Shown in pieces: positions 1 to 7,496 of a DNA stretch of 19,829 nt (the first letter of the stretch is position 1; every line of letters starts with the position of its first letter). The notes beneath the pieces were generated by a model. That model had not been told where the DNA came from, ran no database searches, and saw only the letters and a program-made list of their open reading frames with translations. Made by a program: the position numbers and the translations under genes. This stretch comes from Fonticula alba ATCC 38817 (taxonomy: Eukaryota > Protista > Nucleariida): assembly GCA_000388065.2 (NCBI GenBank), contig KB932204.1, one strand, 5' to 3'.

Positions 1-64
1 GAGAGAGAGAGAGAGAGAGAGCAGGCAGAAGAGGCAGAGGGGAAACACCCAACTCCGGACGTAC

Positions 65-3000
65 GCCCACGAGCCAGGTCGTGATAGAGGTTGGCCATGC
101 CATCGACGGGCAAACTTTCCCGGAAGAAGGTGTTGGCCACCACACGACGCCGGCCCAGCAGGACCTGCGTCAGGCGGATGGTGTCGTCCAGGTCGGAGAT
201 GACCGCCAGGCCGTCAATCAGCCCGGACAGGCATCGGTCCGTGAGGGGCATGTGCGGCTGGGCCGCCAACTTCGGGGCCGCGTGCGCCGCATCGATCAGC
301 GGAATGAAGGCATCCGACACGACTTGCATCTGGTCCTTGATGCCGGGCGGGCCGCTGACCAGGCGCGTGGTGATGCGCAGTCCGGCCACCGGGATGAAGG
401 GCTGCGCGCCGGACTGCAGCGCCGGCGGCAGGCAGTTGGACACCATGCGCCAGGGGGGCAGTGGGAGGGCCACCCGGGCAAAGAAGTGCCCGCTGTTGTG
501 CGTTGTCTGCGGGCACAAGGTCATCGTGAGAGGTGCGCCGNNNNNNNNNNNNNNNNNNNNNNNNNNNNNNNNNNNNNNNNNNNNNNNNNNNNNNNNNNNN
601 NNNNNNNNNNNNNNNNNNNNNNNNNNNNNNNNNNNNNNNNNNNNNNNNNNNNNNNNNNNNNNNNNNNNNNNNNNNNNNNNNNNNNNNNNNNNNNNNNNNN
701 NNNNNNNNNNNNNNNNNNNNNNNNNNNNNNNNNNNNNNNNNNNNNNNNNNNNNNNNNNNNNNNNNNNNNNNNNNNNNNNNNNNNNNNNNNNNNNNNNNNN
801 NNNNNNNNNNNNNNNNNNNNNNNNNNNNNNNNNNNNNNNNNNNNNNNNNNNNNNNNNNAGAGAGAGGCAGAGAGAGGGAGAGAGAGAGAGAGAGAGGAAC
901 ACCAGGGAGCACAAGCAGGCACACGCACTTCCCCTCGACCGACGCATCAGACGGAGCACCGATGACGCGCTTCAGGACGCCGAGCGCCACGGCCCGGCGG
1001 AAGCCACCACGCTTGCGCGGCGAGTAGAGCCACCCGTGCACCGTCATGTTGATGGAGGCCGCATAGGCCGAGGCCGAGGGCGGGACGGCCAGCTGGTACC
1101 AGCCGGTCGGCGAGGGGACCAGCACATGGGGAAGCTGCAGCGACCCGGGCTCCCCGACGGCGAATGTGGCAGCATCAGCCGGCAGGGCGATGCCCAGGGC
1201 AGCAGCCACCGAGGGAACGGCCAGCCGCGGGACCAGAACCGGCCCGGCGGAAACACCCTCCGGGTGCCAGGGCCCCAGGGGCGAGGTATGCTCCTCGGAG
1301 CTCGAGGAGGAGGAGGAGGACGAGGAGCCCGAGGGCCCCGTGGTGCCGGGGGCCGTGTAGTCGCGCACGGTGTACACCGATCCGCCGAAGCCCTGGTCGA
1401 TGCTGGCCGAGCAGACCCCACACACCCCGGACCCGGCCCACTCGAGGACCTCGCGCAGGCCGGCCGCCACGACCTTGGCATTGACCATGCTGTAGGAGTT
1501 GTCCAGGCGGATGGTCAGGCGCCCGCGGGCCGAGGCATTCAGGCAGAAGGCCCCGCCGGCCGGGCCATCCGACGCAAAGACCAGCGTCGGCGGGACCAGC
1601 TGCAGCCAAACAGCCGAGGAGGCATTGTTCGCGGCGGCGGCGGCGGCGGCCGCGGCCGCCGGCGTGCTGCCAGCCGCCGGCACAGCCCCGGGCCCGGGGA
1701 CCACCTGCGTATGCAGGCTACTGGTGGAGGACCCGAGCGAGGCCATGCGGCCGGCCAAGCTGGGACTCGCCCCGCCTGGCAGCATGCCATCAGGGCTAGA
1801 CCCTGGGGGTCGAGGATCCGAGGCACGGCGCCCGGGGGGCATCTTGCCGGCCGGACTGCCGGCGGCCGAATGGGCATGGTGATGGGATGGCTGTGGGTGT
1901 GATTGCTGCCGCAGCATGGGCGCATGATCGCCCGGGGTGGTCTGGGGCCCGGGCGCCTCGGCCCCGGGCGAAGAGGGGTCCTGGTCAAAGTGCTGGTTGC
2001 TCAGTTGGGCGAAATAGTGCTCGGCTTGGGCTTCATCGCCGCCGGAGGCCTCCCAAGCGGCGACCACGTCGCTGGCCGCCAGCCGTTCATTGCTCCCGAC
2101 GCCGTGGTACACATCGTGGCCAAGGAGCAGTTCCGGTGGGCCGGCCTGCTCCACCAGCACGGCCGTCGACTCGGAGCTGGCCGTTGGCTGGAGGTCTTCC
2201 TCGGCCAGAACCCGGGCAATGGCCCGGCTGGACACCGGAGACGCTTTGGACTCGAAGAACAGGGCCCCGGAGGCGGAGGATTGCACGGTGGAAACCCGGC
2301 CCAAGGGCGGAGCCGGCCGGGTGCCAGGCCGAGCCGGGAGCAGTGGCGGCGACCCGCTGCCGGGGGTGCTGCCAGCCGCCGTCGCCGCCGCCGCCGCCGG
2401 CGTCACGGTCGCAGCGGCAGGCTGCCCATGCCCGATGGCCGGATTGCCGCCCAGCAGCGAGGGGGCCGAGCCGGAAAAGCTGCCACTCAAGCGCGAGGGC
2501 ACCGGCGAGGGGGGCGCACTGCCGGTGCCGACCCGGGGAGGGGAGCCCGGCGACAGCAGCGGCGAGTGGGACAAAACCGACGCCGGGGCCGGGAGCACGG
2601 TGCGCGGGGCTTGGGGATACTCCGAGCCGCTGGCCGCCTCCAGGGTGGCCTGGTCTTCGGGCGCATCGTCCAGCGGATCGAAGCGGACCTCCACCACGAG
2701 GTCCTTCTCCTCGAGGGTGGCCTCCCAGCGGAAGGTGCGCCGCAGGTGGAGGTTGAAATTGGCCTGGGCCGTGGTCATGGGGGGCGAGGACCCGGGCCCG
2801 GGGGAGCCCGGTGCCCCTGCTGCATGGACATTCAGCGAGGAGCTCGAGGAGGCCACGGAGAAGCCACGCTCGGCGGGGCTGGCAGCCCGCGAGGAGGGGC
2901 CCCCGGTGGTCGCCATGCCGGAGAGGCCCGGGCTGGCCGGATCGATCGGGCTCCCCACGCGAGAAAGCCCGGCACTCCCGAGCGAGGACAAAGAGCAGGA

Positions 3001-6000
3001 GGGCTCCAGGAGGAGGGAGTCCGGACTGCGCGACTCGATCCCGGGCTCGGAGATGACGGTGGTGGCGATGTCATCGGCCAGGCTGTTGGCGGCGGCCTCG
3101 GTGGAGGCGTCCGACTCGGCCCCCTGGCCGTGGGGGGTCCGGAGAACCGGCTGCGAGCAGGCGCCACACTTTTGACACTGCCCCAGATCCACGGCCGGCG
3201 CCAGCACGGGGTTGATGTCGAGGCTGACGATGAGCACCTGCCCGGCTGGAACGATGTATGTGCGGGAGCTGTGGGCACATGGCCAGGCCATTCGGGCGAG
3301 AGGGGGGAGGCGATGAGGGAGATGCCGGAAGGGAGAGGGAGTGGGTCATGTGTGAGAGGAATGTCGCGTGCGCATGCGCGGAGAGTGAATCTGCGAAGAG
3401 AGAGAGAGGGCGAGGGAAGGGCGAGCAGGCGGCACACGCACACTCGGAGCCCGGCCAGGCGCAGGCCGCGGCGGATGCGCGGGTCAAAGCCGGAAGCCGA
3501 AGCAGCCGCGCTGGTGCCCACGGCCGAGGGGGAGATACGAGCGGCGGCCGCGGTGGCCGGCCAATCGTCCTTGACGATGCAGGCATACGTGGGGAAGAGG
3601 TCGATCAGGGTACCGGGCGAATCGCTGGCGGCCAGGCTGGCGGCCGCGGCGGCATCATCGCGAGGGGGGACGCCCCCGGTGACGGCAGAGCCCCCGGCGG
3701 TGGCGGTTCCAGAGCCGGGCCCAGCCCCGGCGGGCTGGAGGTTGCTGCTACTTCCGCTGATGACACCCAATGCACGGCGCCACATGTCGGTGGAGGCGCT
3801 GGTGAAGGCCGACAGGGAGGCCTGGCCGGAGGCGAAGGCGAAGTCCGGCGCAAAGACCGGGGGGAGGGTGGCGCGCGGGGCCTGCGGGGTGGTGGCGCTG
3901 TCGAGGCAGAAGCCGCTGTCCAGCGGCAGGGGCGAGTTCCAGGAGGACCCGCGAATGTTGGACCCGGTGAACTCCGAGTGGGGAATCCAGAGGGTGGGCT
4001 CGGTGGCACGTTGTGGCCGAAGGTGCGGGGTCAGCCAGTCCGAGGAGGGGGCTGCGGCGGTGGCGGCAAGCGAATACCCGGGGGCCTGAGCAGCGGCGTG
4101 CTGGTCGGGCGGCGGGAAGAAGACGACCGGCGGGGCGGTCGGGGTCTGGCCGAGGGGGGCGGCGGGGGCGGCGGGGACTGCGCCGTGTGGCGTAACCGGC
4201 AGGCTTCGGAGGAGGCGCGCGGGGAGGATGGGGCGCTGGCTCCAGGGGTCTACCAGCAGAGGCCCGTGTGTGGGGGTGGCCGAGTCACCGCTGCTGGTGT
4301 ATGTCCCGTGGAAGGCGGCACAGGAGAAGGCGGCCTGCTCGGTGGCGGCGGCGGAATCGCCGGACAGCTGGGCCTGGAGGGCGTGGGTGCGGATGGCAAG
4401 CCGGGTGCGGGCCTTGTCGCCGAACTTGTCCACGCAGGCGGTGGCCGCGGTCAGGGCCAGGAAGCGAAAGAGGCGGCCGGTGCGGGAGGGAGGCGGCTCG
4501 AGGGCAAGCTGCTCGGGGGAGAGGAGCTCGGCGTGGGGGTCGGGATCGGCGTCGGCCGGGGGGTGGGTGTGAAGGCGCGATCGGGCCGCCCGGCGGGAGG
4601 GCCAGGCAACGGGGGCCGGGGCGGCGGCCGGCTGGAAGTAGTCCGGCAGATACTTGCAGCCGGGGAGGGCGTGCTGTGGGAAGGTCCCCTGCGGGGCGGG
4701 CGGCGTAAAGAAGGAAGCTGGCGACCGGGGGGGCAACGAGGGGGGGGGAGGGGCGTGGGCTTCCGCCGAGCGGTGGACCGGGCGGCCGGAATGGCGGCAA
4801 AGCGAGGGGGGAGCACCGGAGGAGGGGCAGGGCAAGGGGGAGGAGGAGGGGGCGGACGAGGAGGAGGGATGGAGGGAGCTGACGCGGGGCTGGTCCGGGC
4901 CGGGAAAGCTCCCGGGTGCCCCATGAGGCGGCCTCGGCAGCCGGGGCAGCGGAGGCGGGCCGTGTCCGGGGCCCTCCTTCCGCCGGGCCCGTGTCGCCGT
5001 GTCGGGAGCGGGCGGGCGGGGCCCGGCGATCGGGACGGGGCGTCGAAGGGCCGGCAGGGGGACCGGTCGGCCTTGTCCGGCCGCCCAGCCGCCATGCGGC
5101 GGGGGGCCGTGGTGTTGGTACGGCCGGGCGGCCGGCGAGGCCCCCCGCGGCCAGTCGAGCGGCTGCCCCGGCAGGGGTGCCGGCCGGGAAGGGGGTGGCG
5201 GCGGCGGCGGCGGCGGCGGCGGCCGGCGCCGTGGCTGTGGCACCGGCCCCCCGGGGGGGCCATCCCCGAGTGGGGTAACTGCCGGCCCGGTGGTGGTGGT
5301 GGTGGTGGTGGCGGCGGCCGCGCGCCGCCGGGGGGAGGATGGCAATGGGGGGGATCGGGCAAGTGCCCCACTGGGCGTCCCGGTGCCGGGCGGGAGCAGG
5401 CGCACCGGCGGCCCGGCTGGCCGGGGCCGCGGACGAACACCTTGCTGGGCGGCATTGTCCTCGGGCCGGGCCGCTGGCCGGTCCGTTGCCGGGGGCAGGC
5501 TGCCCGGCCGGTCGGGTCGGCTGGCGCCGGCCGTGTTGCCGACAGGGTGGCCGGTGTCTGTGGGCCAATCGGCCTCGGTCGGGTCACGCATGACGAAGCG
5601 TACGGTGGGTCGATGGCCGGGCGAAGCCTCCCCCGGGTTGCCCGGCGGCGGGGGTGGTGCCGGTTGCGGCGACATCCGTCGCGGAGGCGCGATCTGCCCC
5701 AGCAGCGGCGGCAGCGGCGGCGGCGGCGGCGACGGTTCCCAACTGCGCATTGAGGCGGGCCCGGCGCCAGCCGGCCCCCCACGGGGAGCCGGAGGGGCCG
5801 CCCTGCCTTGGCATTTGCCCCTGCCGGCTGCCGGCCCAAAGGTGGATTGGGGGCCGGCATCAAGGGCCAGGATGGCGGCGCCGGCGCCGGCGCCGGTGGT
5901 GGTGGCGGTTGCCTCCACAGTGGGCAGCTTCCGGGCCTGGCGGTCGTGGCCTCTGAGCTGGTATTGTTGTTGTTGTTGTTGTTGTTGTTGTAGTTGCGCG

Positions 6001-6159: not shown

Positions 6160-6232
<73 letters not shown>

Positions 6233-7496
6233 AAGGGCGAGGGCGAGGGTCGATGTGAGATTCTCGAGTGTGTATGCGCTTGCTCGCGCGGCCGGACCTG
6301 ACGCGCGTGAAGCCGCGCGTGAATATCACCCACCCATGCCCGCTGGGGGTCGCGCGCGCGAGAGGCACTCCCCGGGCCCTTTTTCGCATGGGCCAGCCGC
6401 GGCGGTTTGGTTGGCCGCCAGAAGGCCCGCAGGAAGGACACACACACGCACACAGCCCAGGGGGCTGAGAGGCTCAAAACACTGGCCTCGGATGACAGTG
6501 CGCGCGGCATGGCCTGGCGTTGCGACACGCGCGCGCGCACGCCCATGCCCCCACATATTGCCGACATTTTGGCCTGCTCAGACCCCACCCCACAGATGAA
6601 CCCGCCCTCGGGCGGAATGCGCGCCCCCGTGGCTCCTCCTCCGCCCGCTGCCGCGCCGTGCCTGCCTCACACATCTGGGCCCGCACAGGCCTGGGCTTTT
6701 CCGGGGCCGCGGACCGGAGGGCAGGGCAGGCCCCCGGCCCGGACACAAACACAGCCGCCGGGGGGGGGGGCCGCCCGGGTTGGCCAGTCGGGGAGGGGGG
6801 GGGGGAGGGCGAGGGAAATAACATGGCCTGGCGCTGAGCCACACCAAAATAACCCCCGCCCCAATAACGCGTGCCCCGCCCGTCGGCGGCGGTGGCAGGC
6901 CGGTCGCCAGGTGGTCCCTCCGCACGGGTGCCAGGATGTCGGGACCGTGGGCGGCCGAGGCCCCCCCCCCCCCCCGCCCCCCCCCCGGGCCCCAAGCCCC
7001 CGGGTGGAGACCCGCACTCAGCTGAGGGGGCGGGCGGACGGGCGGGCGGACGGGCGGACGGGCGGCGGAAGAAATGGAAGTGCACTCCGTTGGTACGTAC
7101 GCTTCGGGGGACGCGTCGCGCTGGGAGCCGGCCCCGGGAGGACCGTTGGCAGGCACCGGGGTGCCCCCGGCCAGCGGCCCTCGACGGACATCGCCCGGTC
7201 CATCTGCCATCGCCCCTGGACGCCGGTCGGATGGCTGTGAAGGCCACAGGCTGGACGAGGGATGACCGGAGCCAAGATCCGGGCTGGGCGGCACCCCCAG
7301 CGGCGTCCGGCTCACAAGGTCCGAGAAGGAGGCGACCGGGCTCGCCGGTGAGGCGACGCCAGCCAGACGGTCGTCAGCCGGGGCCGGTGCCGGTGGAGTG
7401 CAGAGCACCGCCACCAACTTCGGAGAGTCGACCGGCGATCGGAGCCCCGGGAAGGGGTGTGGACTGGGGGCCGACATCCGGGCGCTGGCGGTGGAG
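65..7496 (-). CDS. APP1: Giant App1-family phosphatidate phosphatase with split GOLD-like domain. Exons (minus): 7101-7496, 3442-6117, 929-3268, 65-540 (may start inside the N gap). 3' end lies beyond the left edge.
   Basis: Seen: a minus frame of 65-540 not in the ORF track translates ...GLAVISDLDDTIRLTQVLLGRRRVVANTFFRESLPVDGMANLYHDLARG. DLDDT is at 180-194. Upstream is INMTVHGWLYSPRKRGGFRRAVALGVLKRVIG (958-1053). Donors GTACGT at 7100, GTGCGT at 3441, GTGCGT at 928 and GTACGT at 64. CAG acceptors at 7497, 6118 and 3269 join in phase 2. Knowledge: ISDIDDT..NTF....VPGMA.LY is the App1 catalytic (HAD-like DxDxT) signature. Confidence 0.85.
541..858. other. Assembly gap (318 N) inside the App1 gene
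   Basis: N run. It hides the acceptor or start of the catalytic exon. Confidence 1.
1447..3267 (-). other. GOLD-like beta-sandwich domain in three pieces (3208-3267, 2674-2760, 1447-1611) within the App1 gene
   Basis: Pieces SRTYIVPAGQVLIVSLDINP / RTFRWEATLEEKDLVVEVRFDP / WLQLVPPTLVFASDGPAGGAFCLNASARGRLTIRLDNSYSMVNAKVV follow, in order, the strand motifs of ACBD3/SEC14L-type GOLD domains, which end in FDNSYS..SK.V. Confidence 0.65.
5964..5990 (-). repeat. (CAA)9 coding repeat, polyQ, in App1 exon 3442-6117
   Basis: (TTG)n on the plus strand; ORF reads QLQQQQQQQQQY. Confidence 0.85.
6161..6230. repeat. G70 homopolymer (poly-C on the sense strand of an App1 intron)
   Basis: Direct count. It ends about 43 nt before the acceptor at 6118. 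The length may be an assembly artefact. Confidence 0.9.

What the first reader, a model, noticed from the sequence alone, without database searches (positions are those of the whole stretch)
65..3267. App1-type phosphatidate phosphatase fused to a GOLD domain that is split into three pieces
Seen: three hydrophobic beta-strand blocks (3208-3267, 2674-2760, 1447-1611) are separated by 149 and 354 aa of Ser/Pro/Ala/Gly low-complexity sequence. They lie upstream of App1 motifs (VHGWLY; ISDLDDT). Knowledge: concatenated, the blocks follow the ACBD3/SEC14L-type GOLD pattern (V..G.V..V; L.WEF.....DI.F.V.F; IVP......G......G.L...DNSYS...K.V). Yeast App1 is a Mg-dependent PA phosphatase at actin patches, and GOLD domains mediate Golgi/membrane targeting. 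Inference: a PA-to-DAG enzyme with its own membrane-trafficking targeting module. I do not recall this App1+GOLD architecture. Profile scans would probably miss it because about 105 aa of domain are spread over about 607 aa.
Basis: partly seen in the sequence, partly recalled or inferred. Interest (0 to 1): 0.72.

Follow-up and report, generated by a model that had tools for sequence, protein, structure and literature searches.

The report
App1 phosphatase with giant loop insert
This Fonticula alba gene encodes an App1-family lipid phosphatase whose first beta-hairpin carries a roughly 790-residue, mostly low-complexity insert, and the proposed GOLD targeting domain inside that insert rests on one short motif and could not be confirmed.

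Summary

**Assembly gap.** cDNA-like contigs from four runs join window 929 to 507 through 186 letters that the window lacks. This is a hidden exon, and it keeps the reading frame.

**App1 identity: secure.**
- Exon 65-506 matches Pfam APP1_cat positions 2-51.
- The neighbouring public model carries positions 54-153.
- A 459-base contig overlap shows the scaffold order is wrong, so this is one gene split by the assembly.

**Position of the blocks.** They are not an N-terminal fusion. They lie inside the hairpin between the family's first two strands (FPTYA...W and MTVHGWLY). That loop is 4-11 residues in short homologs, 46-52 in fungal App1, and about 782 here.

**GOLD reading: not established.**
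- Pfam, PDB sequence searches and an exhaustive homolog search found nothing.
- Against 25 Pfam-verified GOLD_2 domains, only a 23-column DNSYS motif aligns (27-78% probability).
- Blocks 1 and 2 fall in the expected register but are not significant on their own.
- The strands flanking the motif score at or below chance.
- A colinear-chain test is suggestive.
- Single-sequence AlphaFold was uninformative.

None of 52 App1 homologs carries GOLD.

Best reading: a lipin-like split Ig domain with a long, mostly disordered linker. I put a GOLD-like fold at about 0.25.

The parts
3561..3605 (-). First beta-strand of the App1 N-terminal domain (LIDLFPTYACIVKDDW), at the end of the upstream exon, which ends at 3442.
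   Evidence: The same element, [FY]P[ST][YI]A...W, opens the conserved part of 25 of 51 homologs. In the AlphaFold model of homolog P0006 it is strand 24-34.
3269..3441 (-). Intron between the upstream exon and the large exon.
   Evidence: The donor GTGCGTGTGCC is identical to the donor at 928, and the acceptor is cccacag. The join keeps the frame through codon GT|C (Val). Public model P0001 reads ...GLRLAGLR-V-SRTYIV. No RNA joint was listed for this intron.
929..3268 (-). Large exon of 780 codons. It encodes nearly all of the roughly 782-residue hairpin insert plus the second App1 strand.
   Evidence: The frame is open throughout. cDNA-like contigs cover it almost completely with no internal joint. 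An exhaustive phmmer search of 1.84 billion representatives found only the protein itself.
3208..3267 (-). Block 1 (SRTYIVPAGQVLIVSLDINP).
   Evidence: Single-sequence AlphaFold predicts a beta-hairpin here, with pLDDT 51-55. It is the second-best hit of the GOLD N1 matrix in the protein, at 7.5 bits, which is not significant. hhalign gives P 0.23, in the expected register.
2674..2760 (-). Block 2 (NFNLHLRRTFRWEATLEEKDLVVEVRFDP).
   Evidence: It is the top hit of the GOLD WEF..DIGF matrix in the whole 1812-residue protein, at 7.5 bits, with P about 0.05 by shuffles. hhalign gives P 0.49, in the expected register. The language-model look-up found nothing for it.
2002..2076 (-). Helical island within the second spacer (P0001 1197-1221).
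   Evidence: AlphaFold predicts helices at model residues 463-487, with the highest pLDDT of the model, 50-63. The composition here is not low complexity.
1447..1611 (-). Block 3. It contains the motif GRLTIRLDNSYSMVNAKVV at 1468-1524.
   Evidence: hhalign against 25 verified GOLD_2 domains aligns 23 columns, with probability 78% and P 1.8e-5 for the isolated block, and 27% and P 6.6e-4 for the whole protein. HMMER gives 9.1 bits. All of the positive score sits on the 10 motif columns; the free columns sum to -5.6 bits. The 40 residues before the motif score at chance.
1018..1053 (-). Second strand of the App1 N-domain hairpin (INMTVHGWLYSP), followed by the RKRGGFRRAVALGVLKRVIG helix.
   Evidence: It aligns to the fungal App1 consensus vdvRGWiYsPhk...R ('long' profile, domain 2) and to h.h.G.VFE of the short homologs. 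In the P0006 model it is strand 41-50.
508..928 (-). Two intron ends flanking the assembly gap (N at 541-858), which hides an exon of about 187 bases.
   Evidence: There is a joint from 929 to 507 with 186 letters between, in contigs of all four runs. The frame is kept: 2+186+1 = 189.
65..507 (-). Exon holding the rest of the N-domain and the start of the catalytic domain. The DxDxT motif ISDLDDT lies at 180-200.
   Evidence: Pfam APP1_cat positions 2-49, E 5.3e-8. My own profile of the nearest homologs aligns positions 169-217, E 3e-17. Contigs stop exactly at 65 and run on into sequence outside the window.

Best explanation
This is one transcribed Fonticula alba gene for an App1/DUF2183-family, HAD-type (DxDxT) phosphatidate phosphatase. 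Assembly gaps and a mis-ordered scaffold have cut it into two public gene models.

The family fold is lipin-like: an N-terminal beta (Ig-like) domain packed on a HAD-like catalytic domain. In Fonticula the tip of the first beta-hairpin of that N-domain carries an insert of about 782 residues. The insert is lineage-specific and mostly Ser/Pro/Ala/Gly-rich.

[quoted passage not shown] The linker would then act as a flexible regulatory or interaction region.

A GOLD fold for them is not demonstrated.
For: **App1 identity**
- APP1_cat profile positions 2-51 lie in the window and 54-153 lie in the next public model.
- My own profile of the nine nearest homologs places P0001 1672-1721 at positions 169-217 and P0002 10-118 at positions 219-324. 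All HAD motifs are present.

**One gene, not two**
- L001 19198-19656 is 100% identical to 22345-22803, so the two contigs overlap in the opposite order to the scaffold.
- An acceptor in front of ...ACATLHYVSNSPWQL keeps the frame with the exon that ends at window 65.
- Transcript contigs run on beyond 65.

**Insert position**
- The loop between FP[ST]YA and V.G..Y is 4 residues in bacterial-type forms, 8-11 in the nearest short forms, and 46-52 in fungal App1. In Fonticula the two motifs start 794 residues apart.
- In the P0006 model (pLDDT 90.9) these elements are strands 24-34 and 41-50 of one hairpin.

**Lipin-like fold**
- Foldseek matches the P0006 model to Tetrahymena Pah2 and the Nir2 LNS2 domain, with E 2e-12 to 1e-10.

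**Precedent for a split domain**
- Lipin N-Lip and C-Lip co-fold into a split Ig-like domain across 250-500 residues (PMC7066176).

**Character of the insert**
- The composition is mostly low complexity.
- There are no homologs anywhere.
- AlphaFold gives no packed domain.
- The insert is present in the mRNA without internal splicing.
Against: - Three islands give colinear best matches to the GOLD profile. The chain score is 27.8 bits against 9-11 +/- 4 in shuffles, reached by 0 of 1000 shuffles.
- For blocks 1 and 2 alone the chain has P 0.003-0.006.
- The language-model look-up names GOLD families for block 3.
- So a very divergent folded module in the insert is not excluded.
- Disorder is inferred from composition and from a low-confidence single-sequence model, not measured.
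- The join from window 65 to the catalytic remainder is inferred from frame and profile continuity. I did not read it from RNA.
Confidence: 0.6

Rival explanations
1. The three blocks, with further strands, form an extremely divergent GOLD-like beta-sandwich nested in the hairpin of the App1 N-domain. Its own loops are expanded by 149 and 354 residues. It would give the phosphatase a membrane- or partner-binding module.
For: - hhalign of verified GOLD_2 domains hits the DNSYS motif, with probability 78% for the isolated block.
- The best registers of blocks 1, 2 and 3 are profile columns 5-14, 24-42 and 102-124, which is colinear.
- Block 2 is the top WEF..DIGF hit in the protein.
- The chain tests are significant.
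- MAFFT places the GOLD halves on blocks 2 and 3 in all modes tried, and on block 1 in E-INS-i mode.
- The language-model look-up lists only GOLD families among the named hits for block 3.
- The second spacer sits where ACBD3-type GOLD domains have their acidic insert.
Against: - No Pfam GOLD hit.
- No PDB sequence hit to a GOLD protein.
- My HMMER N-half profile finds nothing.
- Blocks 1 and 2 are not significant on their own.
- All of block 3's score lies on the 10 columns that also defined the reference set. The free columns give -5.6 bits, and the last strand is not beta-like.
- The beta5-beta6 region scores at chance, P 0.8.
- Real GOLD rows left out of the profile score 8.6-39.8 (N2) and -1.8 to 28 (free columns). 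This protein scores 7.5 and -5.6.
- None of the 25 references has an insert at the position of the first spacer.
- The motif hit is near chance level across a whole proteome: HMMER E is 6.5e-5 per protein.
- AlphaFold did not pack the blocks, though that model is too poor to count.
Confidence: 0.25
2. The islands are structured but not GOLD. They could be extra strands that extend the App1 Ig-like domain, or short interaction motifs and a small helical module.
For: - AlphaFold gives a local hairpin for block 1, and helices for P0001 1197-1221 and for the stretch right after DNSYS.
- Fungal App1 also has a conserved element inside the same loop.
- Lipins carry a folded M-Lip domain inside their linker (PMC8342540).
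Against: - No homolog, family or fold match of any kind for the insert.
- The model confidence is very low.
Confidence: 0.1
3. The architecture is an artefact. The large exon and the App1 exons would belong to different genes, or the insert would be retained intron or mis-assembled DNA.
For: - The locus is full of gaps and one scaffold join is wrong.
- Long open frames are cheap in this G+C-rich DNA.
Against: - Single contigs link 1622-929 (which includes block 3), the hidden exon and 507-286. Another links 1294-929, the hidden exon and 507-123, which includes DLDDT.
- Both App1 hairpin strands flank the insert in one frame.
- Introns are removed from the same contigs, so they are processed RNA.
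Confidence: 0.04

Closest known systems
Fungal App1 (yeast actin-patch phosphatidate phosphatase; Pfam PF09949 APP1_cat)
   Same: It has the same catalytic domain with the DxDxT, SNSPW and GDSGE.D motifs. It has the same N-domain elements (LFP[ST]YA strand, V.GW.YSP strand, basic helix). Fungal App1 also has an insert in the same hairpin.
   Different: The fungal loop is 46-52 residues with its own conserved motif. Here the loop is about 782 residues and unrelated in sequence. In a tree of the catalytic C-part, Fonticula does not fall in the fungal clade (long branch). The protein totals roughly 2,400 residues against 800-1,000.
Short DUF2183/App1-like proteins of about 350-410 residues with FYPS[YI]A (P0003-P0010; origin unknown)
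   Same: These are the nearest relatives of the catalytic part, at 44-50% identity. They group with Fonticula with support 98/85. They share the hairpin sequence, including the Trp before strand 2.
   Different: Their hairpin loop is 8-11 residues. They have short hydrophobic N-termini and no long tails.
Lipin/Pah1 phosphatidate phosphatases (Tetrahymena Pah2 structures 6tzy and 7lhk; Nir2 LNS2 domain)
   Same: They share a two-domain Ig-like plus HAD-like fold, by Foldseek on the homolog model. In lipins the Ig-like domain is split by a 250-500-residue, largely disordered linker and still co-folds (PMC7066176). A folded membrane-binding M-Lip domain sits in that linker (PMC8342540).
   Different: It is a different sequence family (11-15% identity). 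I did not show that the split point in the Ig-like domain is the same. Co-folding across the Fonticula insert is inferred, not shown.
GOLD_2 domains of the ACBD3/SEC14L type (Pfam PF13897)
   Same: The motif G.h.h.hDNSYS....K.h has identical spacing. A WE.....D.h.h.h.F stretch and a V.AG.h.h stretch lie upstream in the right order. A large insert sits at the family's known variable site.
   Different: There is no family-level hit. The strands before and after the motif do not match. There is an extra 149-residue insert where no reference has one. Scores are at or below the weakest true members.

Membership tests
App1 / DUF2183 phosphatidate phosphatase family (PF09949) | Match to the APP1_cat profile above Pfam's gathering score. 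| tested here: met
   Exon 65-506 scores 33.4 bits against a cut-off of 27.1, covering positions 2-49. The continuation at L001:20881-22755 scores 77.6 bits, covering positions 54-153.
App1 / DUF2183 phosphatidate phosphatase family (PF09949) | HAD-type catalytic motifs: DxDxT, a Ser/Thr motif, a conserved Lys, and GDxGxxD. | tested here: met
   The motifs are SDLDDT in the window, then YVSNSPWQL, ERGKSAAI and LIGDSGERDPELY in the continuation. They align to invariant columns of 50 homologs.
App1 / DUF2183 phosphatidate phosphatase family (PF09949) | N-terminal beta-domain that opens with the hairpin [FY]P[ST][YI]A ... h.h.G.h[FY]. | tested here: met
   Both strands are present (P0001 745-759 and 1537-1549) but about 782 residues apart. 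The hairpin is seen in the P0006 model.
App1 / DUF2183 phosphatidate phosphatase family (PF09949) | Mg2+-dependent phosphatidate phosphatase activity. | not testable with these tools
   This needs an enzyme assay of the full-length protein and a DLDDT mutant.
Fungal App1 orthologous group | Branches within the fungal App1 clade. | tested here: not met
   In a maximum-likelihood tree of the catalytic C-part, Fonticula joins the short FYPSYA forms (98/85) while the fungal clade is separate (98/87). The Fonticula branch is long, so this is provisional.
GOLD domain (PF13897 GOLD_2, PF01105, PF25099) | Profile match to a GOLD family model. | tested here: not met
   No GOLD family appears at E up to 10 for the 787-residue exon, for the three blocks alone, or for P0001. 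HMMER's filters may hide very weak matches.
GOLD domain (PF13897 GOLD_2, PF01105, PF25099) | Profile-profile similarity over the whole domain to verified members. | tested here: inconclusive
   Only 23 of 131 columns align (probability 78% and 27%). Blocks 1 and 2 give P 0.23 and 0.49, though in the expected register. The chain statistic is significant.
GOLD domain (PF13897 GOLD_2, PF01105, PF25099) | Conserved strands before the motif (IIP.YR..H.EV..G) and the last strand (K.LYYRVYY). | tested here: not met
   The region upstream of the motif scores 5.2 bits against 6.3 +/- 1.3 in shuffles. The free columns of the C-terminal block sum to -5.6 bits, below every left-out true member.
GOLD domain (PF13897 GOLD_2, PF01105, PF25099) | Eight-stranded beta-sandwich fold. 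| tested here: inconclusive
   Single-sequence AlphaFold of P0001:735-1580 gave mean pLDDT 35.7 and no sandwich. The model is too poor to count either way. Folding the joined blocks was left out.

The most novel reading that the evidence does not exclude
A highly divergent GOLD-like sandwich, itself split by two long low-complexity loops, is nested in the first hairpin of the Ig-like domain of an App1-type phosphatidate phosphatase. That would be a domain-in-domain architecture linking PA-to-DAG conversion to a Golgi or membrane-trafficking targeting module. None of the 52 homologs examined has it.
Probability: 0.25. Interest if true: 0.6.

Novelty: new variant of a known kind. Interest (0 to 1): 0.33.

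Why it matters
**Annotation.** Two public Fonticula models (1812 and 619 residues) are pieces of one phosphatase gene of about 2,400 codons. One exon is hidden in an assembly gap and one scaffold join is in the wrong order.

**Biology.**
- The first hairpin of the App1 N-domain is a hot spot for insertion: 4, about 10, about 50 and about 782 residues in different lineages.
- The App1 family shares the lipin-like Ig-plus-HAD fold.
- The Fonticula protein is therefore a natural parallel to the split Ig-like domain of lipins.
- This suggests App1-type enzymes can also be regulated through a long linker.

**If the islands do fold into a GOLD-like module,** this would be the first phosphatidate phosphatase with a built-in trafficking-type targeting domain.

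**As it stands,** this is a moderately interesting variant in a genome known for low-complexity expansions.

Tried and rejected
**Searches that found nothing**
- Pfam on the large exon, on each block, on the upstream region and on P0001: APP1_cat only.
- PDB phmmer. Block 3 hit only antibody framework-3 segments (RFTISRDNSK), which I take as chance. Blocks 1 and 2 hit nothing.
- Word-indexed homolog searches on residues 545-787 and 558-622: none.
- Exhaustive phmmer of the 787-residue exon: only itself.
- Metagenome scan for relatives: none.

**Weak or negative look-ups**
- Language-model look-up. Block 3 gave GOLD families at 0.80-0.86, below the tool's 0.9 line, so this is a lead only. Block 2 gave nothing.
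- Literature: among the 15 top-ranked of 50 papers holding at least two of the terms 'App1', 'GOLD domain' and 'phosphatidate phosphatase', none mentioned 'GOLD domain'.

**Structure prediction**
- Single-sequence AlphaFold of P0001:735-1580 gave pLDDT 35.7, so I did not fold-search it.
- I considered folding the insert with the GOLD alignment as its MSA and rejected it. The result would be circular if positive and uninformative if negative. MAFFT in its default mode also misplaces block 1.

- The first DNA pattern for the metagenome scan was one specified base short and I corrected it.
- I left two contigs from that scan (L030, L067) out of all comparisons. They looked vertebrate, not human by my reading.
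- The ATG at 3291 is not the start codon. The frame continues from an upstream exon.

Full report
**What is in the sequence**

The region lies on the minus strand of G+C-rich eukaryotic DNA. Earlier notes of this scan name the genome as Fonticula alba. The public name of the neighbouring protein agrees (H696_02889).

One frame is open from 3268 down to 929. The spacers are exactly 149 and 354 residues. VHGWLY is at 1041 and ISDLDDT at 200-180. The linkers are 50-90% Ser/Pro/Ala/Gly/Thr and the blocks are 15-35%. The descriptive part of the observation therefore holds.

**The assembly gap**

I laid the contigs of four small 2012 runs (two samples, one study) on window 1-6000. They behave as cDNA.
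- They stop exactly at 65 and run on into sequence that is not in the window.
- They join 929 to 507 while skipping the real intron letters 508-540 and 859-928.
- Between the two sides they carry 186 letters that the window does not hold.

The gap therefore hides an exon. The large exon ends with two bases of a codon. Adding 186 letters and base 507 gives 189, so the frame is kept and runs straight into the frame of the next exon. About 63 residues are missing from the window. The public model P0001 is wrong at this point because it splices ...SVEG directly to NGHFF.

Single contigs link 1622-929 (including block 3) to 507-286, and 1294-929 to 507-123 (including DLDDT). Block 3 and the App1 start are therefore on one RNA. 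No internal joint was reported between 929 and 3264.

**App1 identity and the true extent of the gene**

Exon 65-506 matches Pfam APP1_cat positions 2-49. The only database protein matching the large exon is the 1812-residue public model P0001.

Its locus (L001) shows that the window ends at a 1720-N gap. The next public model, P0002 (619 residues), carries APP1_cat positions 54-153 with E 1e-21.

A profile of the nine nearest homologs places P0001 1672-1721 at positions 169-217 and P0002 10-118 at positions 219-324. These are the two halves of one domain.

The contig placed between them (L001 19198-20868) begins with 459 bases identical to the end of the contig placed after it. The scaffold order is therefore wrong, and both public models end in the same terminal exon. 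An acceptor (cccttcag) in front of ...ACATLHYVSNSPWQL keeps the frame with the single base left at window 65.

I infer one gene of roughly 2,400 codons with a complete catalytic domain (DLDDT, SNSPW, Lys, GDSGERD). I did not read the last join from RNA.

**Where the blocks sit**

The public model and my own reading of the splice sites agree that the large exon is preceded by an exon ending ...LIDLFPTYACIVKDDW...GLRLAGLR. The intron is 3441-3269 and its donor is identical to the one at 928.

Among 51 homologs the family opens with a strand [FY]P[ST][YI]A, a short loop, and a strand h.h.G.h[FY]. The loop length varies by lineage:
- 4 residues in bacterial-type YRGYG forms.
- 8-11 residues in the nearest short forms.
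- 46-52 residues in fungal App1.
- In Fonticula, FPTYA and VHGWLY start 794 residues apart.

AlphaFold of the nearest short homolog with a 50-sequence alignment (pLDDT 90.9) shows the two elements as strands 24-34 and 41-50 of one hairpin.

Foldseek matches this model to lipin/Pah (Tetrahymena Pah2) and the Nir2 LNS2 domain at E 2e-12 to 1e-10. The family therefore has the lipin-like Ig-plus-HAD architecture.

The three blocks lie inside a giant insert at the tip of the first hairpin of the App1 N-domain. They are not an N-terminal fusion. Lipins offer a precedent. Their N-Lip and C-Lip co-fold into a split Ig-like domain across 250-500 residues (PMC7066176). That linker also holds a folded M-Lip domain (PMC8342540).

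**Is it GOLD? Standard tests**

The standard tests are negative.
- No Pfam GOLD family for any piece.
- No GOLD protein in PDB sequence searches.
- No homolog of the insert in 1.84 billion representatives or in metagenomes.

A language-model look-up for block 3 listed only GOLD families among its named hits, at 0.80-0.86. That is below the tool's reliability line. Block 2 gave nothing. Single-sequence AlphaFold gave pLDDT 35.7 and cannot decide.

**Is it GOLD? A direct test**

To get a real test I scanned metagenome contigs for a back-translated G.Y.L.FDN[ST]Y[ST]....K pattern. I took 25 non-redundant eukaryote-type domains by reference. All 25 hit Pfam GOLD_2.

hhalign of this profile gave the following.
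- Block 3: 23 columns around DNSYS, probability 78%, P 1.8e-5. Against the whole protein this falls to 27% and P 6.6e-4.
- Block 2: P 0.49.
- Block 1: P 0.23.
- Each best alignment is nevertheless in the expected register (columns 5-14, 24-42 and 102-124).

My own position matrices gave further support.
- Block 2 is the top WEF..DIGF hit in all 1812 residues (P about 0.05).
- Block 1 is the second-best N1 hit.
- The best colinear chain scores 27.8 bits against 9-11 +/- 4 in global or local shuffles, reached by 0 of 1000.
- The chain of blocks 1 and 2 alone does not depend on the motif used to fetch the references. It has P 0.003-0.006.

The evidence against is as follows.
- In block 3 all the positive score (+17.8 bits) lies on the ten motif columns. 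The free columns sum to -5.6 bits, and the last strand (VVAAGLR against LYYRVYY) is negative.
- The 40 residues before the motif score 5.2 bits against 6.3 +/- 1.3 in shuffles.
- True GOLD rows left out of the profile score 8.6-39.8 for the WEF block and -1.8 to 28 for the free columns. Fonticula scores 7.5 and -5.6.
- None of the 25 references has an insert at the first spacer's position.
- HMMER's E-value for the motif hit (6.5e-5 per protein) is close to chance across a proteome.

My estimate is that a GOLD-like fold is possible, at about one in four, but not shown.

**Novelty of the architecture**

All 52 App1 homologs returned carry only PF09949 in their precomputed Pfam annotation, and none carries GOLD. 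Among the 15 top-ranked of 50 papers holding at least two of the three search terms, none mentioned 'GOLD domain'.

In a tree of the catalytic C-part, Fonticula groups with the short FYPSYA forms (98/85) rather than with fungal App1. The Fonticula branch is long. The origin of those short forms could not be looked up.

**Verdict**

- App1-family phosphatidate phosphatase: confirmed.
- Single gene broken by the assembly: well supported.
- Insert of about 782 residues at the first hairpin: shown.
- GOLD domain: unproven, resting on one short motif plus weak colinear similarity.

I class this as a new variant of a known kind, of moderate interest.

I left two vertebrate-looking contigs (L030, L067) out of the comparisons.

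Noticed in passing
window 508-928 (N run 541-858): Transcript contigs carry 186 letters between 929 and 507 that are absent from the assembly. This is a hidden exon of about 63 codons, and the public model P0001 splices across it.
   Followed up: partly
L001 19198-19656 and 22345-22803 (record KB932204.1, beyond the window's left end): These 459 bases are 100% identical. The contig placed first in the scaffold overlaps the end of the contig placed second, so their order is wrong. Two public models (1812 and 619 residues) share the same terminal exon and are parts of one gene.
   Followed up: yes
window 6160-6245, minus strand: A run of about 85 C, followed at about 5965-6000 by a CAA repeat that encodes a poly-Gln stretch of the public model. 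The model places an intron over the C run.
   Followed up: no
homologs P0014-P0030 (fungal App1), loop between LFPSYA and VDVRGWIY: The 46-52-residue hairpin loop of fungal App1 holds its own conserved element (D-A-E-[YF]-W..[EQ]W..[YF]E.D.A[VI]VD). I found no description of it.
   Followed up: no
model of P0006 against PDB: The App1/DUF2183 fold matches lipin/Pah phosphatases and the Nir2 LNS2 domain at E about 1e-11, with only 11-15% identity. App1 appears to belong structurally with the lipin-like Ig-plus-HAD enzymes.
   Followed up: partly
loci L016, L049, L061, L104 and L027, L035, L076, L117, L118 (metagenome contigs): Small prokaryote-looking proteins, some with signal-peptide-like starts, carry the same G.Y.L.FDNTYS....K motif as eukaryotic GOLD domains. 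I did not include them in the profile or examine them further.
   Followed up: no
window 3067, 4610, 4632, 5427, 5834, 5875: Transcript contigs of several runs have loose ends of up to 255 letters here that match nothing in the stretch. They could be chimeric contigs at G+C-rich repeats, or unmodelled splice or overlapping transcripts in the 5' part of the gene.
   Followed up: no
window 2002-2133 (P0001 about 1178-1221): A segment of the second spacer that is not low complexity (ELLLGHDVYHG...DVVAAWEASGGDEAQAEHYFAQL) is predicted helical, with the best confidence of an otherwise poor model. It could be a small module or binding motif.
   Followed up: no
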